From Mobula hypostoma (lineage: Eukaryota), in NCBI RefSeq assembly GCF_963921235.1, contig NC_086106.1, positions 25,482,001 to 25,546,000 on the forward strand: 64,000 nt of DNA, given 5' to 3'. Under the pieces are notes generated by a model. The model searched no databases. It was not told the origin of the DNA and saw only the letters and a list, made by a program, of their open reading frames with translations. Positions 3,544-51,310 of this stretch are shown in pieces. Numbering within the stretch: the first letter of the stretch is position 1; every line of letters begins with the position of its first letter. The position numbers and the translations under genes were made by a program.

Positions 3544-3549
3544 CTGTAA

Positions 3550-4435: not shown

Positions 4436-4571
4436 TTAAACAGTTGGTGCTCGGTCAGGATATGTCCCGATTTTGAGTTTAAGTGCTGGTAATTGCCATT
4501 TTGATTTGGAAAATTTGGAAAACTGTCCCGATTTTTTTTTTGACTGGTGTGCGTGTTTTTTTCGGCAAACA

Positions 4572-7125: not shown

Positions 7126-7700
7126 TAGTAATTTTATGTCTGGGTTATTTCAACAGATAGTTTAAAAACTCGGAGCAAAATAGATTGTTTCCTCAGCCTA
7201 TCATCCAGAATCACAAGGAGCCTTGGAGAGATTTCATTCTGCACTAAAAACTATGATTACGATGTATTGTGTAGAAAATGAAAAGGAATGGGATGAAGGT
7301 ATACATTTACTACTTTTTACAGTAAGGGAGGCTGTACAGGAATCATTAGGTTTCAGTCCTTTTGAACTTGGGTTTGGACATAGAGTTCGAGGACCTTTGG
7401 CTTTGTTGAAGGAACAGTGGATTAATAAGGAAGTACAGACTAGTTTGCTAGATTATGTTTTGAAATTTAAAGACAGATTGTACAAAGTTTGCAGCTTGGC
7501 AAAGGAAAATATAAATTCGCTCAAGAGAAGATGAAGACGTGGGATGATAAGGAAGGTAGGATGAGGTCATTTAAGCCTGGAGGTAAGGAGTTGGTTCTTT
7601 TCCCAGTTACAAGCCAAATTCCATGGTCCTGATGATATTAAATCTAAGGTAAATGATGTGGATTATGTGGTAAAAACCCCAGAATCGAGAAAGACAACTC
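7126..7700 (+). pseudogene. Integrase fragment of outer element
   Basis: YHPESQGALERFHSALKTM..WDEGIHLLLFTVREAVQESLGFSPFEL. Confidence 0.85.
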
Positions 7701-7879
7701 AACTGTGTCATATAAATATGCTATACCGTACTATGAGACAGAAGTTTCTACTATGGCTGTTGTGGTCAATAATGAGTCTGATCTTGATGAGAACTTTATA
7801 GAGGAGTCATCTGAAGCGCATTTTAAACCCAACATTATTTCAGCCAGGTTACGAAATTCAAAAATTCTGGAAAATATTG

Positions 7880-8180
7880 ATTAAAAAAATAGCTCATTTA
7901 CAGCCGGAGCAGAAAGAGAAGATGAAACAGTCAATTTTTAAGTATAGAGATTTATTTCCAGACATCCCTAGAAGAACCATCGTAGCTACACATGATGCAG
8001 ATGTTGTAGATGCCAAACACATAAAACAGCATCCATATAGAATGAACAGGGAAAAATGTGAACTTGCTGAACAAGAAATTAAGTATATGTTACAGAATGA
8101 TATTATTAGACATTCCAATTCGATTTGGAGTTCACCATGTGTTATGGTGCCTAAGCCAGACAATAGTATTAGGTTTGTAT
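7880..8180 (+). pseudogene. RT N-terminal part of outer element
   Basis: IKQHPYRMN..IIRHSNSIWSSPCVMVPKPDNSIRF. Continues after the nested element at 13190. Confidence 0.85.
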
Positions 8181-9061
8181 TGTTACGTACCCCGTAACTG
8201 GGTTGCCAAACCAGCAGAAATGGATCACTCAGTTGGAGTCTGGAGTACTAGAACTAAGAAAGTTTTATTAAAGAAACAAGCAACACAGTAATCGAAAGGA
8301 TAATAAATGCAACAGTTCAGTGATGATAAACACACATGTGCACAGAATTAAGATAACAGCATCAATCAAGCTCTATCGTTGTCTAGGGGTAAATGACCAA
8401 TTTCAAAATGACTCAAAGTTCAGTCCAGTTTAGTAGTTCAGTTCGCAGTAATCGTTGCCATGGCGGTGGACAATGTGGGGGAAGAGAGAGAATGAATAGG
8501 AACAACTCATCATTCAGAACGGCTTCACTCACAGACCAGCAGGATGGCTCACAGACCAGCGAGATGGCTCACAAACAGCTTTTTGGGCGGGTCCTTGGTG
8601 ATGTCACCTGAGGTCACCGACTGTGACCCCTCCTCCAGATGCGGTCGATCCTCTGCAGTGAACCCGGCACCCAGGCAAGGGCGGACACACACCGGGTTCC
8701 CGCTGATCGTACCTTTCCACCCTTGTCGTTGTCTGGGACTTCTCACCCACTCGTGAGAAGCGCACCGCTTCCAGGGTCTCGTTACCTCGGGTGGCGTGTG
8801 TGTCTGTCTTAGCGAACCTGTCCCTTTTTATCCCCCTGCTGGGGTATCGCCTGTCCATCACTTCAAACAGTTCAGGGTTCAAAGGGGGGAGCCGCTCCAG
8901 ACAGCTCTTCCTCCCACATCCCTTCATTACACATCTCCAGACGCTGCTCCATTGTTCCTTATCTCTCCTTCCCCTGAGGGCAGGTGGCAGACCAACTGCT
9001 GATGCCACTGATGCTAGCCCAGGCCAGCAAACATCTTAATTTTATGTGTATTCTCGTAACA
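8181..9061 (-). repeat. 3' LTR of inner element
   Basis: TGTTACG...CGTAACA, direct repeat of 12309-13189. Confidence 0.95.
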
Positions 9062-9233
9062 CTTCCCCCCTTTAAGGATTTTTACCGGGAGGTAAAAATT
9101 ACAAACATGACTACATTATCTGATACATACACAATATACATCTTTAACAGTTATTTAGCTAATACAGAGAATTTGAAGCTGTCAACACCTTGACAGACAG
9201 TCATCACATTTTCTGTTCCTTTTACACGTGTTA

Positions 9234-12209
9234 TTAATAATCCCTTAGACCAGGCTCCAACTCAGCAAACTTCATAGTGGCCAAAAACACTGATGAATTG
9301 CGACCAATGTAACCTCTCATTTGGTTTTGTCCCGGACCACAATAACAAGGGTCGTCCCATTCCGACTCAGTTTTCTCTCGCAAGGGCTTAGTAGGAGGGG
9401 GACGGGTATTGACCGCAGAGTTATTGCAAAACTTCCTGCAGTACCCCACCATCTCCAAGAGCCTTCTGAGGGCCCTCCTGTCTGTCGGGGTTGGGAGGTC
9501 AGCGATAGCCTGCACTGTAGCTTGCATCACTGCCAGCTGCCCCTGTGTCACCACAATTCCCAGGTAAGTGACTCTCGTGTGGCCGAATTCATTTTTTCCA
9601 AGGCTCACTATCACGCTGGCTTCAGACAGCCGTATTAAATTGCCAATACACACCTCTGTGTTCATCAGCCCTTTAGTCACTGAATTACTCAAAAAATATG
9701 GGTGTTGTTTACTTGGCCGCCCTATTGTAACCGACATAACCCAACGTCCCAGTTCTTTGCATTTCCTCGGGACAATCAAACACATGGGTGCGAGTCGTTT
9801 AATTACTCCTTCGGGGATTAAGGGAGAGACCTTATCAGTAGACCTGGCCAAAACAATAGCCTTCTCCCATCTGACCGATCCCATCCTAATCTTTTCAAAA
9901 TGGTTTTTTCCTCTTATCAAGGGGCCCCTAGCTTCATTGATTTCCACGCTAACACCGACTAGGTTTGTTAGCATATCAAAAGCCGGTGACCGTCTCAGTT
10001 CGCGTCGGTCATGATCAATAACATTCTTCCCCCTGGGCAGCCGGTAAATCTCTTTCATGATTCCACCAACTGTTTCCTCCAGCACCGCAAAATGTCCACC
10101 GGGGGGTACCTCGTGGGCCATGTTAAAAACCTCATCCCCATAACTCTTTTGCACCACCCCCCACTCCTCATCTGCGGATGCTGTACTTGATTTCCCTTTC
10201 TTCCTTAGCACTTCCTCATCCGCACAATAGCCTACTAGTTCCCTTGTCAAGGCTGTGTCAGAGAGAGCTGTCTCGGCCAAAACCATCAGCCCCTCGTCTC
10301 GCTCCTGCGTCTGCACAAATTCTTTCCTGGCTACTGCTACGTCCGTCCCAGCTCCCTCACTACCTCTTATCTCACTACACCCTGTCTCATACAAGGTTGG
10401 CAGGAATGTTTCAGCCAAATTCACCATCGCGGGCGGGGCCCCCATGCTGGCAGGCTGACCCGTCAATCTCACGACTGGGAACACGATTCCTCCGGCGATG
10501 TCATTACCGAGCAAGACTTCCACGTCTTTCATCGGTAATTCGGACCTCACCCCGATCGTGACTAGTCCAGAGACCAGGTTGCTCTGTAAATGTATCTGGT
10601 GCAAAGGGACTGACTCTGTCCCTTCCCCAACACCTTTGACCTCTACCTCCCCAGTCTGGGTCTCTGAGCTAAACTCTAATACACTCTTCAGTATTAGTGA
10701 CTGACACGCTCCCGTGTCTCTCCAGATCCGCACTGGAACTGGTTTTAACCTCTTTTTCACTGACACCAGTCCGGCCGAGATAAACCTCTCGCGCCCTTCC
10801 TGGACTTTTTCAGACCTGTCCTTCCCTAGCGGTTCGCTTAACAGCTCAATACAGCCATTCAAAATTTCCGCTTTTCCTTTCCCCGTCTCCTTCCTTGGGG
10901 CAAAGCACCTGGACGCAAAGTGTCCGACTTTCCCACAATTATAACAGACGACTCCAGGAGACTTCCTACCAGACTGCTCCCGGTCTACCTTATCCTTTTC
11001 ACTAGTCCCCGGCTTACTTTCTGACTTTTCCGGTGGACTCTCCCCGCCGTCCTGACTACCCTTCTGGTAGCCTTTACTCGGGGCAACCTTCATTTTATGC
11101 GTCAACGCATACTCATCCGCTAACTTAGCAGTTGCGGCTAACGTGGCTGCCTCTTTCTCATCGAGGTAGGGTCTCATACCCTCAGGGACACAACCTTTAA
11201 ACTGCTCAATCAGAACCAGTTGCAGCAGTCTGTCATAATCCCCCTCTACCCCTTTCGAGGCGCACCAACGCTCACAATATGTTTGCATCTCGCGAGCAAA
11301 CTCCAAATACGTGCGGTCCCACCGCTTCCTCGCATTTCGGAACCTCTGCCGGTATGCCTCCGGGACCAACTCATAAGTCCTGAGGATGGCCTCCTTCACC
11401 ACCTCATACTTCTGGGCATCTTCCGGGGATAAAGCGGAGTAAGCTTGTTGGGCTTTCCCTTTCAGTACACTCTGAAGTAAAACAACCCACTTATCCCTCG
11501 GCCAGTCCTGACTTATAGCTACTTTTTCGAAGTGGAGAAAGTACCGATCCACATCGGTATCGTCAAATGGGGGAACCAGCCTAACCTCCTGGGTCGCCCG
11601 GAACCCTCCACCTTGGTTCGGCACGAGCCCCTGCTCGGCCCTTATCTTTAACTTCTCCAGCTCAAATTCCCTTTCCCTCTGTTTCTCCTCTCTCTCCAAC
11701 TGCCTGTCCCTCTCTCTCTCTTCTCTCTCCAACTGTCTTTCTCTCTCTTGCCTTTCTAACTCTTTCTCTCTCTCCCGCCTTTCTAACTCTCTCTCTTTCT
11801 CCTGCCTTTCTAACTCTCTCTCTTTCTCCCGCCTTTCTAACTCTCTCTCCTGCCTTTCTAACTCTCTCTCTTTCTCCCGCCTTTCTAACTCTCTCTCCTG
11901 CCTTTCTAACTGCTTCTCTTCGTGTTCTAACTGCCGTACCCGGAACTCGTGCTCGAGTCTCAGTTTTTCAAGCTGTACCTGTACCGCGTCTCCAGCAGGT
12001 TTTTCAATAGACACCACCCCCAGCTCACCTTGGGGAAACACACCTTTAGATACATAGTGCTCTACAATAGCTCTGTGTATCTCCTCTCTCCTCAGTGTCG
12101 ACCTCACCTTAGCAAGATTCACCCGTTTTGCCACAGCTATCAATTCCGATTTCCTGGCATCCTCTAATGCCTCCAAGGTCGGCGCCTTTATAAATTCCTC
12201 AACCTCCAT
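9234..12209 (-). CDS. 991-aa Gag (coiled coil, SCAN-like capsid, CCHC knuckle) - protease - deleted-pol fusion ORF
   Basis: LVPPFDDTDVDRYFLHFEK, ELVPEAYRQRFRN, CYNCGKVGHFASRC, RDTGACQS. Remnants AHEVPPGGHFA (integrase Zn finger) and GHTRVTYLG..LEMVGYCRKF (RT C-terminus). No YxDD motif. Confidence 0.9.
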   Translation of the reverse strand: MEVEEFIKAPTLEALEDARKSELIAVAKRVNLAKVRSTLRREEIHRAIVEHYVSKGVFPQGELGVVSIEKPAGDAVQVQLEKLRLEHEFRVRQLEHEEKQLERQERELERREKERELERQERELERREKERELERQEKERELERREREKELERQERERQLEREERERDRQLEREEKQREREFELEKLKIRAEQGLVPNQGGGFRATQEVRLVPPFDDTDVDRYFLHFEKVAISQDWPRDKWVVLLQSVLKGKAQQAYSALSPEDAQKYEVVKEAILRTYELVPEAYRQRFRNARKRWDRTYLEFAREMQTYCERWCASKGVEGDYDRLLQLVLIEQFKGCVPEGMRPYLDEKEAATLAATAKLADEYALTHKMKVAPSKGYQKGSQDGGESPPEKSESKPGTSEKDKVDREQSGRKSPGVVCYNCGKVGHFASRCFAPRKETGKGKAEILNGCIELLSEPLGKDRSEKVQEGRERFISAGLVSVKKRLKPVPVRIWRDTGACQSLILKSVLEFSSETQTGEVEVKGVGEGTESVPLHQIHLQSNLVSGLVTIGVRSELPMKDVEVLLGNDIAGGIVFPVVRLTGQPASMGAPPAMVNLAETFLPTLYETGCSEIRGSEGAGTDVAVARKEFVQTQERDEGLMVLAETALSDTALTRELVGYCADEEVLRKKGKSSTASADEEWGVVQKSYGDEVFNMAHEVPPGGHFAVLEETVGGIMKEIYRLPRGKNVIDHDRRELRRSPAFDMLTNLVGVSVEINEARGPLIRGKNHFEKIRMGSVRWEKAIVLARSTDKVSPLIPEGVIKRLAPMCLIVPRKCKELGRWVMSVTIGRPSKQHPYFLSNSVTKGLMNTEVCIGNLIRLSEASVIVSLGKNEFGHTRVTYLGIVVTQGQLAVMQATVQAIADLPTPTDRRALRRLLEMVGYCRKFCNNSAVNTRPPPTKPLREKTESEWDDPCYCGPGQNQMRGYIGRNSSVFLATMKFAELEPGLRDY
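11695..11930 (-). repeat. In-frame tandem repeat encoding an E/R/K-rich coiled coil
   Basis: Repeated CTTTCTAACTCTCTCTC units encoding ERQERELERREKERELE. Confidence 0.85.
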
Positions 12210-12285
12210 TTCTGCTGTTTGTCTTTTCTTTCTTTCGGGAATTTTAACCCAATCAATTTACTCCGTCCAAAATTTAGCGTTCAAA

Positions 12286-12304
12286 ATCGCGGACGAGAAC
12301 CCCA
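12286..12304 (-). promoter_or_regulatory. Primer-binding site, tRNA-Pro-like
   Basis: TGGGGTTCTCGTCCGCGAT versus the canonical Pro PBS TGGGGGCTCGTCCGGGAT, 4 nt inside the 5' LTR. Confidence 0.7.
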
Positions 12305-12308
12305 CTTA

Positions 12309-13189
12309 TGTTACGTACCCCGTAACTGGGTTGCCAAACCAGCAGAAATGGATCACTCAGTTGGAGTCTGGAGTACTAGAACTAAGAAAGTTTTATTAAA
12401 GAAACAAGCAACACAGTAATCGAAAGGATAATAAATGCAACAGTTCAGTGATGATAAACACACATGTGCACAGAATTAAGATAACAGCATCAATCAAGCT
12501 CTATCGTTGTCTAGGGGTAAATGACCAATTTCAAAATGACTCAAAGTTCAGTCCAGTTTAGTAGTTCAGTTCGCAGTAATCGTTGCCATGGCGGTGGACA
12601 ATGTGGGGGAAGAGAGAGATAGAATAGGAACAACTCATCATTCAGAACGGCTTCACTCACAGACCAGCAGGATGGCTCACAGACCAGCGAGATGGCTCAC
12701 AAACAGCTTTTTGGGCGGGTCCTTGGTGATGTCACCTGAGGTCACCGACTGTGACCCCTCCTCCAGATGCGGTCGATCCTCTGCAGTGAACCCGGCACCC
12801 AGGCAAGGGCGGACACACACCGGGTTCCCGCTGATCGTACCTTTCCACCCTTGTCGTTGTCTGGGACTTCTCACCCACTCGTGAGAAGCGCACCGCTTCC
12901 AGGGTCTCGTTACCTCGGGTGGCGTGTGTGTCTGTCTTAGCGAACCTGTCCCTTTTTATCCCCCTGCTGGGGTATCGCCTGTCCATCACTTCAAACAGTT
13001 CAGGGTTCAAAGGGGGGAGCCGCTCCAGACAGCTCTTCCTCCCACATCCCTTCATTACACATCTCCAGACGCTGCTCCATTGTTCCTTATCTCTCCTTCC
13101 CCTGAGGGCAGGTGGCAGACCAACTGCTGATGCCACTGATGCTAGCCCAGGCCAGCAAACATCTTAATTTTATGTGTATTCTCGTAACA
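12309..13189 (-). repeat. 5' LTR of inner element
   Basis: Direct repeat of 8181-9061. Confidence 0.95.
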
Positions 13190-13760
13190 GTATGGATTAT
13201 AGAAATGTGAATGCTGTGACAAAAAATAAAAAGGCTGATGCATATCCAATCCCTAGAGTAGATGATTGCGTGGATAAAGTTGGACAGGCCAAATTCCTGA
13301 CAAAAAAATGATTTGTTGAAAAGTTCTTGGTGTGTTCCGTTGACGGATAGAGGTAGAGAGATTTCAGCATTTGTAACCCCATCTGGGTTATATGAATATA
13401 ATGTTCTTCCATTTGGGATGGAGAATGCACCAGGTAATTTTCAGAGGATGACAAATGGCGTGATTCAGACAAACAGATGCAGATGCCTATATTGATGATT
13501 TAGTACAGGGAATAATACGTGAAAGCATATGTTACGGCGGTGGAGAAATTATTTGAGAGACTTTCAAAAGCTAACTTAACTACTAACCCAGCTGAAAGTG
13601 AATTTGGTAATGCCACTGTGACAGTTAAGGAAAAAGGTTAGGGCATTTGGAATCCAATTTAATACCACAGTTTAATGTTAAAAGATTACAATATTTTGAT
13701 CACTCATATTAAGGGTAAAGATAATATGATCACAGATTGTCTATCTAGGTGTTTAATGGA
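13190..13760 (+). pseudogene. RT continuation of outer element, heavily deleted
   Basis: DYRNVNAVT..AYPIPRVDDCVDKVG..SAFVTPSGLYEYNVLPFGMENAPGNFQR, and terminal HIKGKDNMITDCLSR. Confidence 0.85.
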
Positions 13761-13951
13761 CGATAATAATTTGTTTTTTTTGGAGTGATGTTTTAACATT
13801 TGTAACACTCCTACTGTGCATTAGTTTGTAAAAGGCTGAAAGATAAGATTGTATGTCTTGTGTACTTTGTAAATTTTATACCTTTTATTATTTTTGTAAA
13901 AATTGTTAACATTATTTTCTTCAAGAGACCAATTATTTTTTTCGAGGGAGG

Positions 13952-14837
13952 TGTTACATGCTTGAGGCGATCTGTTTTTTTTTGTGAGAATGATGTAATT
14001 GTCTTTTGGAGGTCACCTAATGTGATTTTCCCGCCGATATGAGGACACGTGATGACATGTGCCCTGTGACTATATAAGGGTCAACCCAGGTGAAACAGGG
14101 GTCTTTTTTTTTAGTTGTAGACTTCCAGGTAGAACGTGCTGTATCTCCGTTTCTGTTGCATGCTTGTTTTTGGTGACGCAGTTTCGTTTTTAAAACGGAG
14201 TGTGCGTTCTGTTGCAAAATAGCAAACTGGAATATTTTGCTAGATGTGTTGATTTAATCAATTCCAACATTAGAAGGGAGAGTGAAGAATTTATCGAAGT
14301 TACAGGATCGATGGATCGAGAGTAGTCGGTATCATTTGGCAGTTTACTAAAGGATCGACCTTATCGAGTCTTCGTTGGAGGATCAGCTACCTGCATCGAG
14401 ATAACTCTTGCCAAACAGAGCAAGGAGTTCATGCAAAAAGGTGCTCTCTCTCTCTAAAGGAATTTAAAGTCAGTTAATTTAAACTGTTTATTTTTTGCAT
14501 CGTGAATCCTGTGGACAGAACCAGCAGTAAACTTGCGTCTGTGAAGAAATCCTTCTCCAGAGAAGTCTCTCCCAATTGAACGTGTAAATCTGTTGGACTT
14601 TCGAAGTTATCGTTTTACGAACTATATTTGACTTTAACGCTTTATGATCTTTTTTCGCATTTAACGCTTTAAGAACCAGAGCCGAGTGGCGAGTTGGTGA
14701 ACTTCTGCATATCTGTTAACTTCCGGTTAAAGTTTTCGTTTATTTTTTCCTTATCGTTTATCCGTGTTTAATAAATGTTTGGCTATTTTTTATATAACCT
14801 GTTTCGATCGATGTTCATTGTTACCGTTTACGTAACA
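13952..14837 (+). repeat. 3' LTR of outer Gypsy element
   Basis: TGTTACATG...CGTAACA followed by TSD GTAA. Confidence 0.9.
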
Positions 14838-14920
14838 GTAAAAACTCCCAGAGTCTGTGAGCGGAGCCGAATCGCACCGACCACGTAGGACAAGCGCTAT
14901 CCGATTAGGCCGAGACACGC

Positions 14921-14966
14921 CAGGGAGCGCAGACGTTAGGGTCATCGACCAACACAGGGGAAATAT
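14921..14966 (-). pseudogene. Orphan leader exon of the V at 3268-3543
   Basis: 46 nt reading (ATA)IFPLCWSMTLTSALP-G with a mutated donor GCGTGT. Same length and phase as the intact leaders. Confidence 0.65.
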
Positions 14967-16756: not shown

Positions 16757-17037
16757 GTCTGATTTGCGCAAAGATACAGCGCAGAAACCCACCCAAGAAC
16801 TACGGAGGTAGTTTCCTGCTCTGGAAATCAGACATCCTAACAGGGTTATCTTCAGACCGAGCCACGTATGCGAGGATGAACGTTGTAAATATTTTCTCTG
16901 AAGTTTCCACGAATGTTGATTGTTGCACAGATAAGCAATGACAATTCCCGAGTAATTTTAGCTCAGCGACGTGCTCTGTACTTCCTAATTCAATAATTCC
17001 TTCCGAACCTGGCTCAACTAATACGGCCCATTCATAC
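16757..17037 (-). pseudogene. TCR V pseudogene (family C-like), leader displaced by CR1
   Basis: GMNGPY*LSQVRKELLN*EVQSTSLS*NYSGIVIAYLCNNQH...SALYLCANQ. Cys23 is a stop and the Trp is lost. Acceptor AG at 17038-17039. Confidence 0.7.
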
Positions 17038-17104
17038 CTCTAACAAACCCAAAGTTTCTGAGGGGCGTCGGATCCTTATGGGTTGAGTTAAGAAACTGCG
17101 AGGA

Positions 17105-18725
17105 TTACGGACACCTGCTGGCAGCTATATACAAGCCTCCCGACAGTAGGTAGAATGTGGAGCACAGATTCCAAGAGGAAATAGAAAAGGAGTCTCAAAG
17201 GGTAATGTTATGATTTTCATAGGAAATGTCAACATGCAAGTTGATTGGGAAAGTCAGGTTAGATATGAATCTCAAGAGAGTGAGTTTGTTGAATTGCAAT
17301 GAAACGGCATCTCAGATCAGATTGTCCATCACCCAACAAGGGGATCAGTTGTACAGGATTGGTTGCTGTGCATTGAACTGGAGATAATTAGTGACCTTAG
17401 GATAAAAGAACAATTTGAAGGCAGTGATCCCAATATGACTGAGTTCAACTTGAAATTTGCCACTGAGAAAGTAAAGTCTGACGAAGCAGAATTTCAGCAC
17501 AGTAAAGGAAATTTCAGTGGTATGAGAGGGGAGTTGGCAAACGAATTCTGAATGCAGGACTTGGAAGGACAGGCTGCAAGGGAGGACAACAGAGCAGAAA
17601 GGGCGAGAATACCTGGGGAAAATGAGAAAGGTGCCCGACAGCTGTATCCAAAAATGAGGAAACACGGAAATGGAAAAGTAGTGCAACCGTGGCTGACAAG
17701 GGAGTTAAAGCTAATGTAAAAGCAAAAGAGCGGGTATACAACTAAGCAAAATTAGTTTCAAGACAGAGGATTAGGAAGCTTTCAAATCCCTGGAGAGAAA
17801 CTAAAAGAATCATTAGGAGGAAAAAGATCATATATGAGCGTACGCTAGTAAACAATATCAAAGTGGATTAAAAAAAAGTTGTTTTCAAGAATGTAAAAAA
17901 AATAAAAGTAAGATGAGAGCGCATATAGAAAACAAGAAAATGTAGCCGAAGAAGTAATGCTGGGAGACAAGCTGATGACAGATGAACGATATGAGTATTT
18001 CGCATCAGGCTTCACTGTGGAAGATCCGAGCAGCGGGTCAGTCGTTGAAGGGTGATAGGGATGACATGTCAGTGCAAATACAGTTACAAGGGTGAAGGTC
18101 CTGAAAACACTAAACGCTAGAAAGGAATATAAGTCATCCAAACCAGATGAACTGCACCCTTGCGCCCAGAAAGTGGTAGCAGCAGAGATTGCGAAGGCAT
18201 TAGGAATATTTTTTCAAAATCATTGGCAATGATATAGATGATGGAATACATGGTTGTGTTCCCAAGTATGTAGATGATACAAAGATTGATGGAAGAATAA
18301 GTCATTCTGAGGAAACATGCAGGCTACAGAAGGACAGAAAGATGAGGGAATGGACAAGAGATTGGTGGACGAAGTACAATGCACCAAAACGCATGTCATG
18401 CATATTGGTATAAGAAATAAATGTGCAGACTATTTTATAAGCAGGTAAAAAATACAAAAATCTACGATGCAAAGAGAATTGGAGGATCCAAGTACAGAAC
18501 ACCCTGAAGATTAGCTTGCACGTAGAGTCGGTGGTGAGGAAGAGAAATAAAATGTTAGAATTCACTTCAAGATGTTCAGAATACATGGGCAGAGACGTAA
18601 TGCAAAGGATTTATAAGACACGTGAGGCCTCACCCTAAGCATTCTGAACAGTTTTGGGTTCCTCTTCTCACAAAGATGTACCGGCATTGGAAAGGGTTCA
18701 GAGGACATTCACATGGATGACACAG
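17105..18725 (+). mobile_element. CR1 LINE ORF2 fragment, decayed
   Basis: YEYFASGFTVED, PDELHP..EIAKALGIFFQ and YVDDTKIDG motifs. Duplicated at 21130-22055 and 49535-51125. Confidence 0.8.
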
Positions 18726-18870
18726 TCAGTCCCGCAAGCAAAGCAGCTGTCCAACTAACTGAAAAATGTAGTCAGTAATTTCTCCCCTTTCCCCTGGAGT
18801 GTCGCCTTCTTAAGCCAATCACGTGACAGTGGTGGATCTGTGTTTGCGCCCCGGCTGTTTTCCGGCAAAG

Positions 18871-18885
18871 GGCTCCCTCTAGCGA
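18871..18885 (-). promoter_or_regulatory. CTCF-like motif 23 bp beyond the RSS nonamer
   Basis: TCGCTAGAGGGAGCC versus core CCASYAGRKGGCRS. Identical at 51273-51287. Confidence 0.55.
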
Positions 18886-18908
18886 GCGCTCACTGCATCA
18901 CGGAGGTC

Positions 18909-18947
18909 GGATTTTGTCGAGAGCCGTCATCGCCTTGCAACACTGTG
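18909..18947 (-). other. Canonical 23-RSS
   Basis: CACAGTG + TTGCAAGGCGATGACGGCTCTCG + ACAAAATCC. Confidence 0.95.
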
Positions 18948-19371
18948 GGCATCATGGCACAAAGATAAACGGCGGAATCCGACACAAGAGCACCAGAGAT
19001 GTTCAAATGGGCTGCCTTGCTGTCACGCTGCCAATCAGCGGTAAACCTCGCTGGATTCCGGTCCATCGTCCCACTGCTATATACCGTCAGCAAATATCTT
19101 GGAGATTTCACGTGATGCTGAACGTACCAAACAATATATTGAGGATCGCCAGTGTAATTACAGTTCAGTGTTACACTTTGTTCGTCCGCAATGGTTAATT
19201 CAAGAGGCCATTGCGTCACCGAATCTTTCCCATTTGTTCCTGCAATAAAAGGACAGAATGCATGAACAGATTGGGCTTTCTTCGTACATACCGAACAGAT
19301 ATAGGCCGTTATCGCGGAGACTCACCGGGCATCATAGTCAATATAATCAGCAGATAGCACAGAAAATTCAT
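18948..19371 (-). CDS. TRAV/TRDV: Intact TCR alpha/delta-type V gene, family A (leader 19326-19371, V exon 18948-19239)
   Basis: MNFLCYLLIILTMMP-G|TNGKDSVTQWPLELTIADEQSVTLNCNYTGDPQYIVWYVQH..DSAVYLCAMMP. GT-AG intron of 86 nt. Cys23, Trp41 and Cys104 present, no stops. Confidence 0.93.
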
Positions 19372-19504
19372 GGTGTCTGGCTTCAAACTCGATCGAAAGA
19401 GCGCTTACTTTCAACAAGTTAATATCCTTGACCGATCTTGAAGAGTAAAATCAGATCTGCGGCATATTTCAGTTTGCGTAAATCTGGGGGCGTTGCCCTT
19501 CCGA

Positions 19505-19560
19505 TTGATTGGCTGTGAGCACCGATCTGCGCCGGTCCGAGCACCAATCACAGATCGGTT
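19505..19560. promoter_or_regulatory. Putative V promoter with two opposed CCAAT boxes
   Basis: ATTGG (19508-19512) and CCAAT (19544-19548), plus the inverted pair ACCGATCTG/CAGATCGGT. Conserved at about 22617-22670 and 51910-51965. Confidence 0.45.
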
Positions 19561-20424
19561 TGTTTCAGTTCCTTTCTATGCTTTTAGAAATCCGACGCCC
19601 GGAGCTCTAAATAGCGTCGCGCAACCACTGTGCGAGAGTGGTTATACTTCATTTTCTCTCTTGCATTCTTCTTCCAGTCAGGCTCCCATCTCTATTTCTC
19701 TCTCCCCCCGATGTTTATCGCTCTACTCTCTGTTCTATCGATCATCATCTCTCGCTCTCTCAATTCATTTCTCTTACGTCTCCCCGGGTTATCCACTTTG
19801 TCATTCCATCATACCAAACCGCCCACTTTCTCCCCCCATTTTACTCGCCATATCAACCGCCCCCCGTTTTCCCTGGATATCACTTCCTTTGCCCTCTCGC
19901 AAACCGGAATTCACACTCAGACGCGTTTATCTTCAGAATTCTCCGCTCGGGGAAAACGGCGAAACGCCACTGAGGCAACAAGTCGAGAAACGTCTTCACT
20001 CGGGGGAACGGCGGATGTGCTTTCTGTGCTAGTCTCTTGTCTCTCTGCGCTTCAGTCTTCTCTCTCCAGGAAAGTTCTTGTCGGTTCAGTGTTGTGGACG
20101 GGCGAGCGTTGGATGAAAAAATTGCAGATGCTGAAAATCCAATACAACTCTAAAACTTTGGAGGAAGTCAGCAGGTCAGGCAGAATCTGGGGAACATGTA
20201 AATAGTCGACGTTTCGGGTCGAGACCTTTCTTCAGGACTGAGAAGTAAGGGGGGGTATGCATAAATTAAAATGTGAAGGAACATGAAAGAGTCTGACTGA
20301 AAGGCTACAGGTGAAACCAGGTAGCTGGGACAGGCCAAGGGCTGTAGAAGAAAGAAACTGATGTTCTTATTGAACTGCGGAGCAGGTTCGATGGGTCAAA
20401 TGGCATACTCCTAGTCTTATTTCT

Positions 20425-20631
20425 TAAGGCCTTGTGTTCTGCCCTTCCACGGTCATTAATTTCCTCACATCCTGAGTTAAGGAATTTACCCCACTCGTAT
20501 CTGTAACAAATCTCGGAGAGCGTGATTGGCGACGAATCTTAATGACGGTGTATAACACGCGCAAACTAATGAAGAAGAAATTACCCAGACAGAGCAGCCA
20601 TTAAAATCAGCAACAAACACGAGGGTGATAT
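20425..20631 (-). pseudogene. Truncated V (family E): leader + FR1
   Basis: Leader (ATA)SPSCLLLILMAALSG at 20586-20631, acceptor TTACAG, then TSGVNSLTQDVRKLMTVEGQN. Cut by repeats at about 20100-20420. Confidence 0.6.
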
Positions 20632-20869
20632 GGAGTCGGCATTAACATCAACAATAGGATCTTATCAAATTCTGAACCAGGTGAAGGTAATTGCGTCACG
20701 TCAGGAGCATCAGATGCTCGGGGGAGACACGTGCCCTTCCTCTCGAACCAGATTAGTATATTGTCTATGATGTACCTTCGACTCGGCAGGCGTGTTGGTT
20801 CTAGGTCATCTTCTCTTAGGGCTTCATTTTACCCCTCTTCCTTTACATAGTGTAGTAGATGGTTGTTGT

Positions 20870-21125
20870 GTTCTCTTCATGGCAGATGTTGGAGACCTGA
20901 GAGATCCAGAGTCTCCCAGGGAACTACATCTGCAAGGAATGCATCTGGCTGAAGCTCCTTGAAGACCATGTTAGGGATCTGGAGTGACCAGCTCAATGGC
21001 CTTCGGCTTGTACGGCAGAGAGAGAACATAATCGATCGGAGTCATAGGGAAGCAGCCACCGCGAAGGTGCCGGAGGCAAGTGGCCATTGGACTATCAAGA
21101 GAAATGGAAATGTGAATAGACAGTT
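20870..21125 (+). mobile_element. CR1 ORF1 fragment
   Basis: YICKECIWLKLLEDHVRDLE..-type motif. Longer copies at 24020-24500 and 52530-53090 include the esterase-like AIGDSAIMGTDSRFCG. Confidence 0.7.
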
Positions 21126-21129
21126 AGTA

Positions 21130-22055
21130 ATAGGACAGAGAATTAGAAAGTTTTCAAAACCCTAGGGAACAACTAAAACATCATTAGCAAACAATATCAA
21201 AATGGATACTAAAAGGTTTTTTTCAAAAATGTGAAAAAATAGAAGTGATGTCAGAGTGCATATGGAAGGCAAGAAACTGTCGCCGAAGAAATAATGCTGG
21301 GAGACAAGCTGGTGGCAGATGAACTATATGAGTATTTCGCATCAGGCTTCCCTGTGGAAGATCCGAGCAGCGGGTCAGACGTTTAAGGCTGCAGGGGAAG
21401 ATATCTAAGCGTAATTATAGTGACAAGGGTGAATGTCCTCAAAACGCTGGAGGACAGAAGGGTATATAAGTCGTCTGAACCAGCTGAACTGCACCCTTGC
21501 GCCCAGAAAGTGTTAGCGGTAGAGATTGCGGAGTCATCAGGAATGATTTTTCAAAATCATTGTCAATGATATAGATGATGGATTATATGACTGTCTTGCC
21601 AAGTCTGTAGATGGTACAATCACTGATGGAAGGATAAGTCGTTCTGAGGAAACATTTAGGCTACAGAAGGACGGAAAAATGAGGAGAATAAGCAAGCGAA
21701 TGGCAGACGAAGTGCAATGTACCGAAATGAATGTCAACCCATTGGTATAAGAAATAAATGTGCAGACTATTTTGTAAACGGGGAGAAGATCCAAAAATCT
21801 ACAATGCAAAGAAATTTGAAGGCTCCAAGTGCAGAACACCGTGACGGTTAACTTGCAGGTAGAGTCGATGGTGAGGAAGGCAAATAAAATGTTAGCATTT
21901 ATTTCAAGATGTCCAGAATACATGGGCAGAGATATAATGCAAAGGCTTCGTAGGACACGTGAGGCCTCTCCTTGAACATTCTGAACAGTTTTGGGTTCCT
22001 ATTTTAACTAAGATGTACTGGCATTGTAAAGGATTCAGAGGACATTCACAAGTAT
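21130..22055 (+). mobile_element. CR1 ORF2 fragment (duplicated with the V unit)
   Basis: Collinear with 17780-18725. Confidence 0.8.
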
Positions 22056-22242
22056 GACACCGTCACACCGCAAGCAAAGCAGCTGTCCAACTAACTGAAA
22101 AATGTAGTCGGTAATTTCTCCCCTTTCCCCTGGAGTTTAGCCTTCTTAAATTACTCACGTGACACTGGTGGATCTGTGTTTGCGCTGCGAATGCTTAAGG
22201 CAAAGGACCCCTGTAGCGAGCGCTCACTGCATCACGGAGGTT

Positions 22243-22281
22243 GGATTTTGTCTGGAGCCGTCATCGCCTTGCAACACTGTG
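22243..22281 (-). other. Canonical 23-RSS
   Basis: CACAGTG + 23 nt + ACAAAATCC. Confidence 0.95.
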
Positions 22282-22572
22282 GGCATCATGGCACAAAGAT
22301 AAATGGCGGAGTCCGACACAACAGCACCAGAGATGTTCAAATGTGCCGCCTTACTTCCACGCTGCCAACCAGCGATAAACCTCGCTGATTTCCGTTCCAT
22401 CGTGCCACAGCTATATACCGTCAGCAAATATCTTACAGATTCCACCCGGTGCTGAATGTACCAGAAATAGATGTAGGCTCGCCACTGTAATTACAGTTCA
22501 TTGTTACACTTTGTTCTTCCGCAATCATTATTTCCAGAGGCCATTGCGTCATCGAATCTTTCCTATTTGTTC
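22282..22572 (-). pseudogene. Family A V, leaderless and frameshifted
   Basis: TNRKDSMTQWPLEIMIAEEQSVTMNCNYSGEPTSI, then a 1-nt deletion, then WYIQHRVESVRYLL..DSAIYLCAMMP. The intron joins directly to the promoter (about 225 bp including the leader deleted). Confidence 0.9.
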
Positions 22573-22761
22573 CTGCAATAAAAGGACAGAATGCAGGGCA
22601 GTACCCTGCCAATGGATTGATTGGCTGTGAGCACCGATCTGTGCCGGTCCGAGCGCCAATCGCAGATCGTTTTGGTTCAGTTCCTCTATATGCTTTTATA
22701 ATTCCGAAGGCCGGAACTGTAAATAACGTCGCGCTGACCACTGTGCGAGAGTGGCTATACT

Positions 22762-22814
<53 letters not shown>

Positions 22815-23599
22815 TTTGCATTCTTCTTCCAGTCAGGCTCTCATCCCTATTTCTCTCTCCTCCCAATGTTTATCGCTCTACTCTCTGTTTTATCGATCAC
22901 CAACTCTCGCTCACTCACCTCTTCATTTCTCTTACATCTCCAAGAGTTATCCACTTTGTCATTCCATCATACTAAACCGCCCACTTTCTCCCCCAGTTTT
23001 ACTCACCATATCAACCGCCCACCGTTTTCCCTGGATATCACTTCCTCTGCCCACTCGCAAAGCGCAATTCACACTCAGACGCATTATCTTCACATTTCTC
23101 CCGTCTGGCAAATGGGCGAAACGCCACTGAGGCTGACAATAAGAAAAACTACTTCACTCGGGGGAACGGGGATGTGCTTTGTGTTCTAGTCTCTTGTCAT
23201 AATGCGGTTCAGCCTTCTCTCTCCAGGAAAGTTCTTGTCGCTTGTGTCTTGCGGACGGACGAGAGTTGGATGAAAAATTTGCAGATGCTGAAAATCCAAC
23301 GCAACTCACAAAACTCTGGATGAAGTCAGCAGGTCAGGCAGAATCGGTAGAATTTTTTTTTTGTCGACGAATCGGGCCGAGACCCTTCTTCAGGCCTGAG
23401 AAGTAAGGAGGAAGATGCAAAAATGGAAATGTGAAGGGACATTCAAGAGGCTGACTGAAAGGCGATAGGTGAAACCAGGTAGCTGGGAAAGGCCAAGGGA
23501 TGTAAAAGAAAGAAACTGATAATCTTATTAAGGCATGATCTAATTGAATTGCGGAGCAGGTTTGACGTGTCAAATGGCATACTCCAAGCATTATTTCTG

Positions 23600-24718: not shown

Positions 24719-25045
24719 ATCTCCCTATCTCCTCCCTCTTTTGCACGTATTCCGTGTGGATGCTCCTGACTGAGGCCCACGGGCGCCATGCGTCCATTGG
24801 ACGCAGTATCTGTTCAGCCCAGATCGGCAATTGTACTGCATTAGGGAGGGCTGTTCATGCAAATAGACATAGAGGAACCCTTCCCAAAACCACTGTAGAT
24901 ATTTAAATCCAACCAGTGGAAATTTCATTTCCAAACAACCTGATATCTTCACCTATGTAGTTTACCACTGAGTTTCGCTCGCATAAGTCAACCACGTGAC
25001 TGTTGCAAATACTTGGTTACGCCACTTCGACTTTTCTATCACGAC

Positions 25046-25480
25046 CCGCCCTCTAGCGATGGTTCACTGCATCACACCTCGCACATTCAGTATGTGTTTT
25101 AAACATAAATTCACTTTGAACAATGACAATTTCTCACAGTCCAGAAATGCAACGACCAAAATACTCTTTGCATTCTCTATCACGCTAAACATCCGCAGGA
25201 TCTGTCGCATTATCTGAATACTCAGTATAAATCAGAAGTAGCCACTGCAACATCCTTAATTTCTGCAGCATTACACTTGCTATTCTTTGTCAAACTAAAG
25301 CAAATAATTTGCCCATGCTCTGTTTTCCTTCAGTGAACCACTGTCCTATTTAAGTATATTGCAGTTCCACTTCGTCCATATTACTTCTCTGTGCAGAAGC
25401 TCGAACAATGTGGCCAAAGACAACGTCATTCTACGTTGCCAATGGTGATATGCCGTTGCAGCAAAGAGGGTGGGTGAATG
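25046..25480 (-). pseudogene. Ancient V relic retaining its CTCF-like site
   Basis: CCCTCTAGCGA..TCACTGCATCAC matches the family A post-RSS flank. Remnants of NC...NYLL and a TGCA acceptor context. Copies near 39480-39860, 47050-47224 and 55217-55650. Confidence 0.4.
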
Positions 25481-25689
25481 CACATTGCCGTATCCCGGAA
25501 ATACATTATAAGGATCCAGTCTGGGTGCGCGCTGTAGTCATGAACCGTTCCATTACCTTCACCGCCTTCTGTTGGTGATTGCAGCGCTGTTAAGCAGGGC
25601 CCGTGACCACGGCTGATTTCAGCGTGCGCCCTACCACTTTCTCGGCAAAAGTCGCCCTCGAGTGAGAACTTTTTTCATTGTACAGAACC

Positions 25690-25728
25690 AGTTTTTGTCC
25701 GGACCCGCCGTCTTTAGGCAACAGTGTG
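25690..25728 (-). other. 23-RSS with variant heptamer
   Basis: CACACTG + 23 nt + ACAAAAACT. Confidence 0.9.
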
Positions 25729-30050: not shown

Positions 30051-30123
30051 TTTTTCGCCACTTCCCGATATTCGCTAGGCAAAAGGCCAGTGCAAATTAT
30101 AAGGAACAAAGGAATGGCGCATG
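29690..30123 (-). pseudogene. Possible very old V relic with leader relic at 30077-30123
   Basis: ACACCATG start and MRHS-LFLIICTGLLP-like leader with a dead donor. Weak RQNVQ-YC and FNLH..Q.D remnants. Confidence 0.3.
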
Positions 30124-30179
30124 GTGTCGGGCTACTGACTCTGTGGAAAGGCAGTCTAGTTCCAAGTAGCTACTTTTAA

Positions 30180-39720: not shown

Positions 39721-40006
39721 GCCGTTGTGCCATTTAAATATATCCCGGTTCCACTGCGTCCTCATTATTTCACACTGCAGATACTTGAACAAAGTAGCCA
39801 AAGACGATGTCAGACAAGGCTGTCAATCGTGATATGCCGTTGCAGCAAAAGATGGTGGGTGATTGCACATTGCGGTATCCCAGAAAGTTATAAAGCTGAG
39901 TTTGTGTCCGCGTTGTAATCAGGAACTGCACCTTCAGCTTCGGCGCCTTCTGCTGCTGAATGCAGTGGTCTGAAGTAGGGCACGTGACTGTGACTGATTT
40001 CCGGGC

Positions 40007-40048
40007 GCGCCCTCTGCAGATTCCTCGGAAAAAGGCGCCCTCCACTGA
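40007..40048 (-). promoter_or_regulatory. Tandem pair of CTCF-like motifs beyond the RSS
   Basis: TCAGTGGAGGGCGCC (40034-40048, 24 bp from the nonamer) and TCTGCAGAGGGCGC (40007-40020). Confidence 0.6.
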
Positions 40049-40072
40049 GAGCTTTTTGCAATATACAGATTC

Positions 40073-43596: not shown

Positions 43597-43612
43597 TGGC
43601 GCCCTCTAGCGA
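43597..43612 (-). promoter_or_regulatory. Strong CTCF-like motif next to a dead RSS
   Basis: TCGCTAGAGGGCGCCA. Confidence 0.6.
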
Positions 43613-43650
43613 TCACGAATCCGGACCCGCTGTTTCCCTGCAATTTTGTA

Positions 43651-49461: not shown

Positions 49462-51310
49462 CTCTAACAAACCCAAAGTTTGTGAGAGGCGCCGGATCCT
49501 TACGGGTTGAGTTAAGAAACTATAAGGGTTAAGGAACCCTGCTGGCAGCTATATACAAACTTCCGGACAGTATGTAGAATGTGGAGCACAGATTACAAGA
49601 GGAAATGGAAAAGGCGTCTCAAAGGGTAATGTTATGATAGTCATGGGAGATGTCAACATGCAGGTAGATTGGTAAAGTCAGGTTAGGTATGGAGCTCGAG
49701 AGTGAAACGACATTTTAGAGCCAATGTCCATCACCCTGCACGGCGATCAGTTGTACAGGATTGGGTGTTGTGTAATAAACTGGAGATAATTAGTGACCTT
49801 AGGATAATAGAACAATTTCAAGGCAGTGATCCAAATATGACTGAGTTCAACTTGAAATTTGCCAGTGAGAAAGTAAAGTCTGACGAAGCAGTATTGCAGC
49901 ACATCAAAGGAAATTTCAGTGGTATGTGAGGCGAGTTGGCCAACGAATTCAGAATGCAGGACTTGGAAGGACAGGCTGCAAGGGTGGACAACAGAGCAGT
50001 AATTGCGTGAATTTCTGGGGGAAATGAGAAAGGTGCCCGAGAGCTATGTCCAAAAAATGAGGAAATACGCAAATGGAAAATTAGTACAACCGTGGCTGAC
50101 AAGGGGAGTCAAAGCTAAAATAAAAGCAAAAGAGCGGGTATACAACTAAGCAAAAATTAGTAACAAGACAGAGGATCAGGAAGCTTTCAAAACTCGAGAG
50201 TAAAACTAAAAGAATCATTAGGAGGAAAAATATTATACATGAGCGTAAGCTAGCAAATGATATCAAAGTAGATAAAAAAAAGTATTTTCAAGAATCTAAA
50301 AAAAAATAAAAGTGAATGGAGAGTACATATAGAAAGCAAGACAATGTGGCCGAAGAAGTAATGCTGGGGGACAAGTTGATGGCCGATGAACGATATGAGT
50401 ATTTCACATCAGGCTTCACTGTGGAAGACCCCAGCAGCGGATCAGACACTGAAGGGTGCAAGGGAAGACATCTGAGTGCAATTACAGTTACAAGGATGAA
50501 GGTCCTCAAAACGCCGAAGGACAGAAAAGCATATAAGTCATCCAAACCAGATGAACAGTACACTTGCGCCCTGAAAGTGTTAGCGGTAGAGATTGCGGAG
50601 GCATTAGGAATGATTTTTCAAAATCATTGTCAATGATATAGATGATGGAATATATGGCTGTGTTGTGAAGTTTGTAGATGATACAAAGATTGGTGGAAGG
50701 ATACGTCGTTCTGAGGAAACATGCAGGCAACAGAAGGCCGAAAGATGAGGAGAATAGGCAAGAGATTGGCAGACGAAGTACAATGCACCAAAAAGCATGT
50801 CATGCATATTGGTATAATAATTAAATATGCAGACTATTTTGTAAGCGGGGAAAAATCCAAAAATCTACGATGCAAAGATATTTGGAAGATCCAAGTGCAG
50901 AACACTCTGACGGTTAACTTGCAGGTACGGTCGGTGGTGATGAAGTAAATGCGATGTTAGCATTCATTTTAAGATGTCCAGAATACATTGGCAGACACGT
51001 AATGCAGAGGATTTATAAGACAGGTGAGGCCACACCTTGAGCATTTCTGATCAGTTTTAGGTTCCTATTCTAACAAAGATATACTGGCGTTGGAAAGGGT
51101 TCAGAGGACATTCACATGGATGACACAGTCATTCCCGCAAGCAAAGCAGCTGTCCAACTAACTGAAAAATGTCGTCAGTAAATTCTCCCCTTTCCCTGGA
51201 GTTTCGCGTTCTTAAGTCAATCCCGTGTCAGTGATGGATATTTGATTGCGCCCCGGTTGTTTTCCCGCAAAGGGCTCCCTCTAGCGAGCGCTCACTGTAT
51301 CACGGAGGTC

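What the first reader, a model, noticed from the sequence alone, without database searches (positions are those of the whole stretch)
18846..18947. RSS-proximal, same-orientation CTCF-like sites on an apparent chondrichthyan TCR V array
A CTCF-core-like motif lies 23-24 bp beyond the nonamer at the V genes at 18948 (TCGCTAGAGGGAGCC), 51350 (identical), 40112 (TCAGTGGAGGGCGCC, plus a second site TCTGCAGAGGGCGC) and 25729 (TCACTCGAGGGCGAC). It is degenerate at 22282. Both V families share the spacing, and every motif has its G-rich strand on the minus strand. In mouse Igh, CBEs just downstream of proximal VH RSSs are known to promote contact during cohesin-driven RAG scanning. I infer that a similar architecture may operate in this locus and so be very ancient. 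Motif calls are by eye.
Basis: partly seen in the sequence, partly recalled or inferred. Interest (0 to 1): 0.8.

Follow-up and report, generated by a model that had tools for sequence, protein, structure and literature searches.

The report
CTCF-like box behind ray TCR V signals
In this ray's T-cell-receptor gene array, each usable V segment has a conserved, same-direction stretch resembling a CTCF docking site about 23 bases past its recombination signal; little skate has a stronger version at the same spot, as next to some mouse antibody V genes, but binding is untested.

Summary

As CTCF sites they are only moderate.
- 18870-18888 and 51272-51290 score 10.4 bits (p=3e-5).
- 40033-40051 scores 8.3 and 40005-40023 scores 10.3.
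- The 25729 copy (5.0) fails p<1e-4, and the 22282 copy has decayed.

The window's excess of CTCF-like hits is on the minus strand only (18 against 8.5 expected). V flanks account for all of it.

The box is an island of conservation. Between V families it is 0.70 identical against 0.42-0.48 beside it. Between ray and little skate it is 0.72-0.82 against 0.35-0.42.

All three skate V segments fetched carry a strong site (16.7-17.3 bits) at the same offset and orientation. It was absent at three TRAV-like shark V segments, 11 toad and 7 lizard V segments.

My reading: an ancestral batoid CTCF anchor next to the V RSS, partly worn down in this ray. Binding and function are untested.

The scan had already noted the same element in other windows of this genome.

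The parts
18948..19239 (-). V exon of V18948 (family A, open frame). The leader exon is at about 19326-19371.
   Evidence: Translation and tblastn. Pfam V-set E=1e-13. The top PDB matches are all TCR alpha V domains.
18909..18947 (-). 23-RSS of V18948: heptamer CACAGTG 18941-18947, 23-nt spacer, nonamer ACAAAATCC 18909-18917.
   Evidence: The RSS starts at position 15 counted from the Cys codon, as described for V-alpha in PMC10322711.
18870..18888 (-). It scores 10.44 bits, p=3.2e-5. PWM position 15 is A where CTCF prefers C.
   Evidence: Related ray species read G at this position (18874).
18815..18825 (.). CACGTG E-box (18820-18825) abutting a CCAAT box on the plus strand (18815-18819). Part of the conserved post-RSS module.
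   Evidence: The E-box region is 0.63 identical between families. The E-box is broken in V51350, V25729 and V32795.
51272..51290 (-). S1 behind V51350 (RSS 51311-51349), identical to the 18870-18888 copy.
40033..40051 (-). S1 behind V40112 (family B; RSS 40073-40111). 8.33 bits, p=8.3e-5.
40005..40023 (-). S2, the second CTCF-like site of V40112. 10.31 bits.
   Evidence: It aligns with 32691-32709 (13.6 bits) behind pseudogene V32795.
39941..39959 (-). S3, a stronger same-strand site 113 nt past the nonamer of V40112. 14.43 bits, p=4e-6.
25650..25668 (-). S1 behind V25729 (RSS 25690-25728). 5.02 bits, which fails p<1e-4.
25560..25578 (-). S3 behind V25729, 111 nt past the nonamer. 15.61 bits, p=2e-6.
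22204..22222 (-). Decayed S1 behind frameshifted pseudogene V22282 (RSS 22243-22281). -10.3 bits.
43597..43615 (-). The best S1 copy in the window (16.91 bits, p=1e-6). It lies behind pseudogene V43669, where the nonamer and linker are deleted.
25044..25062 (-). V-less relic of a family-A-like flank that keeps S1 (9.54 bits) and the E-box (24993). Its paralogue is at 55215-55233 (10.53 bits).

Best explanation
The window holds a one-directional array of TCR alpha/delta-type V segments. Each usable V carries a conserved module of about 200 bp directly after its 23-RSS.

The first element of that module, S1, starts 23-24 nt past the nonamer. I read S1 as a CTCF-binding element inherited from the common ancestor of rays and skates. 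It reads 5'-CCAsyAGrkGGC-3' on the V-sense strand. By the convergent-motif rule (recalled from memory, not cited), it therefore points toward where J-C should lie if the V segments join by deletion.

Inferred mechanism, by analogy with mouse proximal VH CBEs: bound CTCF stalls cohesin that is extruding chromatin past a J-side recombination centre. That holds the neighbouring V RSS near RAG and raises use of that V.

In this ray the S1 copies beside functional V segments have lost informative bases. Family A has C15 changed to A, and family B has lost A9. They are probably weaker binders than the skate copies. Family B also carries further same-strand sites (S2, S3) that may take over.

Shown here: position, orientation, motif similarity, and conservation between families and between ray and skate. 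Inferred: CTCF occupancy, cohesin stalling, and any effect on recombination.
For: - Position and orientation are fixed in two V families with 47-50% amino-acid identity.
- Between-family identity forms an island: motif block 0.70, against linker 0.42, next block 0.48, V exon 0.65, and about 0.35 beyond +140. Flank homology is gone beyond +250 (z about 0).
- Ray against skate: S1 0.72 (0.82 for the closest pair), against RSS spacer 0.55, linker 0.42 and following sequence 0.35.
- S1 is the top non-coding 19-column window across the whole -300 to +300 unit (0.74, against a flank median of 0.32).
- All three little skate V segments have 16.7-17.3-bit same-strand motifs 21-28 nt past the nonamer. 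These are the only forward-strand hits >=10 bits in 13.5 kb.
- An unidentified contig, L005, has an 18.1-bit motif 22 nt past the nonamer.
- The frequency matrix of 10 lineage copies correlates with the CTCF matrix (mean column r=0.59; 1 of 2000 column-permuted nulls reaches it). The information profiles correlate at r=0.60.
- The excess of hits is on the V-sense strand only and is fully accounted for by V flanks.
- The V plus flank is low-copy in related species' assemblies, unlike the neighbouring repeats. So this is not a transposon-borne site.
- Skate TAD boundaries show a CTCF orientation code, called with the same MA0139.1 matrix at threshold 8 (PMC10115646).
- Mouse precedent: PMC5859386 Table 2; bioRxiv 10.1101/2020.01.01.891473; PMC7930373.
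Against: - No binding data exist for any copy.
- The copies beside functional V segments here are weak (5.0-10.4 bits). None reaches p<1e-5.
- In family A the key C at PWM position 15 is A. It reads G in two related species, so that position is not held.
- The best copy sits behind a pseudogene whose nonamer is deleted. V-less relics keep the box as well as functional V segments do.
- Within families the box is no better conserved than the surrounding sequence in family B (about 80% against 76%).
- PWM position 4 is T in 9 of 10 copies where CTCF strongly prefers C. Positions 8 and 11, and an upstream GCA..AG, are more fixed than the CTCF matrix requires. This hints at an additional or different reader.
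- The box is absent at the shark, toad and lizard V segments sampled.
- J-C is not in the window, so 'pointing toward J-C' rests on V orientation alone.
Confidence: 0.55

Rival explanations
1. The block is a real constrained element, but a factor other than CTCF reads it, or it serves another role. For example, it could be part of a post-RSS promoter or accessibility module together with the CACGTG E-box and CCAAT box (germline or antisense transcription). The resemblance to CTCF would then be partial and coincidental.
For: - T is fixed at PWM position 4, and A at position 11 is 10/10.
- The upstream GCA..AG is conserved. None of these is demanded by the CTCF matrix.
- The module includes other conserved blocks: GGGCGCA, an E-box, CTTAAG.
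- Family A reads CTCGCTAGAG, one base away from the TCTCGCGAGA promoter motif (recalled from memory).
- S3 has a TTCAGCA half-site like a REST site (recalled from memory).
Against: - The most conserved columns (C5, G10, G13, G14, C15, G16) are the CTCF core contacts.
- The skate and L005 copies are near-canonical CTCF sites at 16.7-18.1 bits.
- The E-box is lost in several copies, including skate 3446, while S1 stays.
Confidence: 0.17
2. S1 is an evolutionary relic. An ancestral batoid CTCF site was copied along with every V duplication. In this ray it no longer binds or matters and is decaying slowly. The shared position and orientation only reflect common descent of the V units.
For: - The copies are degraded at key positions in all four functional V segments.
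- Position 15 varies among close relatives.
- A pseudogene and V-less relics keep the motif as well or better.
- Within-family conservation of S1 is not clearly above background in family B.
- All V segments are co-oriented, so the strand bias follows automatically.
Against: - Island-like conservation between families and across the ray-skate split (roughly 200 million years, from general knowledge), while adjacent bases are saturated.
- The two family-A copies are identical over the block's 22 aligned positions at about 14% overall divergence (about 4% by chance, my arithmetic).
- Frameshifted pseudogene V22282 did lose the box.
Confidence: 0.22
3. Chance: GC-rich strings picked out by eye next to RSSs.
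For: The individual scores are modest. About 4 hits at >=10.4 bits are expected by chance in the window.
Against: - The offset and strand are the same in two families and in skate.
- No dinucleotide shuffle out of 200 reached the minus-strand counts.
- The toad and lizard TRAV arrays, run through the same pipeline, give no post-RSS hits.
Confidence: 0.02

Closest known systems
RSS-associated CTCF-binding elements of mouse Igh proximal VH segments (such as the VH81X-CBE)
   Same: Both are a CTCF-type motif within 100 bp downstream of the V 23-RSS. All copies share one orientation along the V array and point the way the V is transcribed. In mouse these elements promote use of the neighbouring VH during cohesin-driven RAG scanning, and nearby pseudogenes tend to lack them (PMC5859386; 10.1101/2020.01.01.891473; PMC7930373).
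   Different: This is a TCR alpha/delta-type V array in a ray, not Igh. The copies here are weaker matches and the best one is beside a pseudogene. They come with extra sites (S2, S3) and an E-box. Binding and function have not been tested, and homology with the mouse elements is not shown.
CTCF sites of the mouse Tcra/Tcrd V array
   Same: Same type of locus. Most sites (129 of 144) point toward J-C, roughly one per V unit (PMC5859386).
   Different: In mouse they lie mostly upstream of V promoters or between genes, not next to the RSS. The lizard TRAV locus fetched here (L002) likewise has its strong co-oriented motifs about 840-920 bp past some V RSSs, not adjacent.
Post-RSS CTCF motif of little skate TRAV-like segments (L003, Leucoraja erinacea GCA_028641065.1)
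   Same: Same offset (21-28 nt past the nonamer), same strand, and a homologous sequence. With its upstream context, the closest skate copy is nearly identical to ray family A.
   Different: The skate copies are intact core motifs at 16.7-17.3 bits. The ray copies beside functional V segments score 5.0-10.4 bits.

Membership tests
CTCF-binding element | Match to the CTCF core motif at a conventional threshold | tested here: inconclusive
18870, 51272, 40033 and 40005 pass p<1e-4 and the PWM threshold of 8 used for skate in PMC10115646.
CTCF-binding element | Occupancy by CTCF in vivo (ChIP or CUT&RUN) | not testable with these tools
   No such data could be reached. The runs found were genomic DNA and small RNA sets.
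CTCF-binding element | Conservation concentrated on the core contact positions | tested here: met
   C5, G10 and G14 are 10/10. G13, C15 and G16 are 9/10. Profile similarity r=0.59, reached by 1 of 2000 nulls. Conservation island shown. Exception: position 4 is T, not C.
RSS-associated V CBEs (mouse Igh proximal VH type) | Lies within about 100 bp downstream of the V RSS | tested here: met
   23-24 nt past the nonamer at V18948, V51350, V40112 and V25729.
RSS-associated V CBEs (mouse Igh proximal VH type) | Uniform orientation, convergent with CBEs at the D/J-C end | tested here: inconclusive
   All copies are on the V-sense strand. The J-C end and its CBEs are outside the window.
RSS-associated V CBEs (mouse Igh proximal VH type) | Functional V segments have the element and neighbouring pseudogenes lack it | tested here: inconclusive
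   Three of four functional V segments have S1 at p<1e-4. Five of six pseudogenes lack it, but pseudogene V43669 has the best copy.
RSS-associated V CBEs (mouse Igh proximal VH type) | Promotes contact with the recombination centre and V usage | not testable with these tools
   Needs 3C or Hi-C, repertoire data and mutagenesis.
TCR alpha/delta V gene segments | V-set domain closest to TCR alpha V, a 23-RSS, and a split leader | tested here: met
   Pfam V-set. Top PDB hits are all TCR alpha chains. 23-nt spacers. Leader exon and intron seen.

The most novel reading that the evidence does not exclude
Oriented CTCF anchors placed directly behind V RSSs were already part of the antigen-receptor V unit early in jawed vertebrates. 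Batoid TCR alpha/delta arrays and mouse proximal VH segments would both retain this, while other lineages moved the anchor elsewhere in the V unit. Cohesin-driven RAG scanning would then be about as old as V(D)J recombination in large arrays.
Probability: 0.1. Interest if true: 0.85.

Novelty: new variant of a known kind. Interest (0 to 1): 0.6.

Why it matters
RSS-adjacent CTCF elements are known to steer V usage in mouse Igh. I found no paper describing anything similar in a cartilaginous fish or in a TCR alpha/delta locus: the CTCF + RSS + shark full-text search returned nothing relevant.

A conserved, oriented CTCF-type box at a fixed distance from the V RSS in ray and skate gives a concrete, testable handle on one question: was loop-extrusion-guided V choice already in use in early jawed vertebrates, or did it arise more than once? 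Little skate is a laboratory model with Hi-C and ATAC data (PMC10115646), so the test is practical.

The weak ray copies also offer a natural series of motif strengths to compare with V usage.

Tried and rejected
- **Word-index protein search with V18948:** no hits. The exhaustive profile search worked instead.
- **Contig look-ups:** P0025 and P0092 are not on record. The basking-shark P0038 and horn-shark P0061 loci returned no DNA. Shark sampling therefore stayed at three TRAV-like V segments, and the earlier notes' claim that sharks have the box intact could not be confirmed.
- **Horn shark and basking shark loci L007 and L008:** these turned out to be NAR-TCR gene models. Their supporting V segments lack the box.
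- **CpG observed/expected in the flank module:** 0.70-0.99 against 0.71 for the whole window. Not informative.
- **Related species' contigs:** short and multi-copy. Only the best-supported differences are listed, so no substitution-rate test on S1 was possible. One useful datum came out of it (position 18874).
- **RNA run X11:** no coverage over 18800-19999, so there is no evidence for or against transcription.
- **RSS-like hit at 1995:** not preceded by a V.
- **Transposon-borne CTCF site:** rejected on copy number and on the fixed offset from the RSS.
- **Extended RAG contact as the cause:** considered and set aside. The block starts 23 nt past the nonamer and the linker between them is poorly conserved (0.42).

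Full report
**What is in the window**

The minus strand carries an array of TCR alpha/delta-type V segments.
- Five have an intact 23-RSS, with heptamers at 18947, 22281, 25728, 40111 and 51349.
- tblastn and self-comparison add pseudogene or relic V segments ending near 32795, 35072, 37321, 43669 and 63116, a fragment at 30112-30276, and a fragment at about 3262-3365.
- V18948, V51350 (family A), V25729 and V40112 (family B) have open V exons. V22282 is frameshifted.
- The V exons match Pfam V-set, and their best solved-structure matches are all TCR alpha V domains.
- Families A and B share 47-50% amino-acid identity.

**Checking the observation**

Its consensus and its behaviour on canonical sites are as expected. 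I computed exact p-values.

| Site | Coordinates | Bits | p |
|---|---|---|---|
| S1, V18948 | 18870-18888 | 10.44 | 3.2e-5 |
| S1, V51350 | 51272-51290 | 10.44 | 3.2e-5 |
| S1, V40112 | 40033-40051 | 8.33 | 8.3e-5 |
| S2, V40112 | 40005-40023 | 10.31 | 3.5e-5 |
| S1, V25729 | 25650-25668 | 5.02 | 3.2e-4 |
| S1, pseudogene V22282 | 22204-22222 | -10.3 | decayed |

The sites are real but only weak to moderate matches. The mismatches fall on informative positions: T for C at position 4 everywhere, A for C at position 15 in family A, and loss of A9 in family B.

**More than chance?**

Against 200 dinucleotide-preserving shuffles, the plus strand has the expected number of hits. The minus strand has 18 against 8.5 at p<=1e-4, 13 against 3.3 at >=10 bits, and 6 against 0.8 at p<=1e-5. 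No shuffle reached these counts.

Sorting the 18 minus-strand hits by context, ten lie in V flanks or V-flank relics and eight elsewhere. The eight equal the chance expectation. The strand bias is therefore a property of the V unit, not an independent locus-wide signal. It follows from all V segments being co-oriented.

The roughly 200 bp after the RSS forms a conserved module. It contains:
- S1, 20-21 nt past the nonamer (start of the 19-mer PWM window).
- In family B, S2 at about +49 (40005-40023 at 10.3 bits; 32691-32709 at 13.6 bits).
- A GGGCGCA block.
- A CACGTG E-box, intact in five of eight copies.
- CTTAAG.
- In family B, S3 at +111 to +113. This is a better CTCF match than any S1 beside a functional V (25560-25578 at 15.6 bits; 39941-39959 at 14.4 bits).

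The best S1 in the window (43597-43615, 16.9 bits) sits behind pseudogene V43669, whose nonamer and linker are deleted. Two V-less relics of a family-A-like flank keep S1 and the E-box (25044-25062 and 55215-55233).

**Is the box conserved beyond shared descent?**

Between families A and B, identity by region is as follows:

| Region | Identity |
|---|---|
| V exon | 0.65 |
| RSS | 0.64 |
| Nonamer-to-box linker | 0.42 |
| S1 block | 0.70 |
| Next 30 nt | 0.48 |
| E-box region | 0.63 |
| Beyond +140 | about 0.35 |

Alignment scores against shuffled sequence confirm homology from +40 to about +250 (z=4-8) and none beyond (z about 0).

Within families the evidence is thin. The two family-A copies are identical over 22 nt at about 14% overall divergence (about 4% by chance, my arithmetic). 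The family-B copies differ as much in S1 as elsewhere.

**Other species**

An exhaustive profile search with the four V exons, followed by contig look-ups, gave these loci (names). Each was run through one pipeline: tblastn for V ends, a 23-RSS search, then PWM scoring of the flank.

| Locus | Species | Post-RSS motif |
|---|---|---|
| L003 | Little skate, *Leucoraja erinacea* | 3 of 3 V segments, same strand, +21 or +28 past the nonamer, 16.7 and 17.3 bits |
| L005 | Unidentified contig | 1 of 1, 18.1 bits at +22, with a second CTCF-like string by eye about 48 nt past the nonamer, not scored |
| L006 | Bamboo shark, *Chiloscyllium punctatum* | 0 of 2 |
| L008 | Basking shark, *Cetorhinus maximus* | 0 of 1 TRAV-like |
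| L007, L008 | Horn shark *Heterodontus francisci* and basking shark, NAR-TCR-type V | 0 of 3 |
| L001 | Spadefoot toad, *Pelobates cultripes* | 0 of 11 |
| L002 | Skink, *Lerista edwardsae* | 0 of 7 adjacent to the RSS |
| L004 | Unidentified contig | 0 of 1 |

In the skate locus, the three post-RSS motifs are the only forward-strand hits >=10 bits in 13.5 kb.

The skink does have strong co-oriented motifs about 840-920 bp past some V RSSs, which recalls the mouse Tcra layout.

Ray-versus-skate identity by region is V exon 0.63, heptamer 0.89, spacer 0.55, nonamer 0.74, linker 0.42, S1 0.72 (0.82 for the closest pair), then 0.35, 0.47 and 0.29.

Across all lineages, the S1 window is the third most conserved 19-column window of the whole unit and the top non-coding one (0.74, against a flank median of 0.32).

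**Is it CTCF-like in detail?**

I built a frequency matrix from ten lineage copies. It correlates with the CTCF matrix at the expected register and orientation only (mean column r=0.59; 1 of 2000 column-permuted nulls reaches this). The information profiles correlate at r=0.60.

The invariant or near-invariant columns are C5, G10, G13, G14, C15 and G16. Three features are not explained by the CTCF matrix: T at position 4 in 9 of 10 copies, A at position 11 in 10 of 10, and a conserved GCA..AG just upstream.

**Related rays**

Contigs of three related species laid on 17000-22999 show two things.
- The V plus its flank is low-copy (summed depth 25-108), while neighbouring segments are high-copy repeats (depth in the thousands). 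A transposon-borne site is therefore excluded.
- Window position 18874, which is PWM position 15, reads G on the V strand in two of the species. So this key position is A or G in devil-ray relatives but C in skate, in family B and in pseudogene V43669. It is not being held in family A.

**Interpretation**

The best reading is an ancestral batoid CTCF-binding element placed directly behind the V RSS. It is oriented the way the V is transcribed, and so presumably toward J-C.

It is analogous to mouse proximal VH CBEs, which lie within 100 bp of the RSS and promote use of the associated VH during cohesin-driven RAG scanning (PMC5859386 Table 2; bioRxiv 10.1101/2020.01.01.891473; PMC7930373). Skates have a CTCF orientation code at TAD boundaries (PMC10115646), so the machinery is available.

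In this ray the copies next to functional V segments are worn. Whether they still bind is open. Family B's S2 and S3 may compensate.

The main rivals are a different or additional reader of the block, and a non-functional relic. Chance is excluded.

The claim of great antiquity, in the sense of homology with the mouse Igh arrangement, is not supported by the small shark, amphibian and reptile sample. It is also at odds with mouse Tcra/d, whose CTCF sites are mostly promoter-side (PMC5859386).

**Relation to earlier scan notes**

The same element had already been noted in other windows of this genome (s1-141898, s1-141899, s1-141836, s1-142025). Those notes identify the genome as lesser devil ray.
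- My tests on this window and on skate agree with them.
- Their statement that sharks have the box intact was not reproduced at the three shark TRAV-like V segments I could fetch.
- Their mention of bony fishes was not tested.

**Limits**
- There are few independent lineages.
- There are no binding, accessibility, repertoire or 3D-contact data.
- J-C is not in the window.

Noticed in passing
Its left half, TTCAGCA, also resembles a REST/NRSE half-site (recalled from memory, not scored).
   Followed up: partly
window 24990-25100 and 55160-55270: V-less relics of a family-A-like post-RSS flank. They keep the CTCF-like box and, in the 25044 copy, the CACGTG E-box, with no V or RSS upstream. They are duplicated together as part of 24794-25576 and 54966-55746 (86.8% identical).
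   Followed up: partly
L002 (Lerista edwardsae) 952, 2810, 8669, 12511, 16658, 20253: The lizard TRAV array has strong co-oriented CTCF motifs (15.5-22.6 bits, most reading TTTCCACTAGAGGGC). Those at 2810, 12511 and 16658 lie about 840-920 bp past a V RSS. The layout is one per V unit but not RSS-adjacent.
   Followed up: no
L007 18131-18330 and L008 24120-24330: Behind the NAR-TCR-supporting delta V of horn shark and basking shark, the whole RSS (heptamer, 23-nt spacer, nonamer) plus about 25 nt is reiterated in tandem at least three times, with a period of about 64 bp.
   Followed up: no
window 3262-3365: The 3' part of a V of another family (ending ...SLCAFQ) with a degenerate heptamer CATTGTG and no CTCF-like box behind it. 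It borders the retrotransposon nest noted by another reader (3268-14966).
   Followed up: partly
window 17000-18800, 20000-20400, 20800-21400, 21600-22000: Segments with summed contig depth in the thousands in related species and in an RNA library. They are high-copy interspersed repeats packed between the V units. The repeat begins only about 110-150 bp past the V18948 nonamer.
   Followed up: no
window 18874: Two related ray species read C here (G on the V strand) where this genome and a third species read T (A on the V strand). This is CTCF matrix position 15, which is C in skate and in family B.
   Followed up: partly
window 43620-43668: Pseudogene V43669 has lost its nonamer and the linker to the box, apparently by a deletion of about 33 nt. 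The 16.9-bit box now directly follows the RSS spacer remnant.
   Followed up: no
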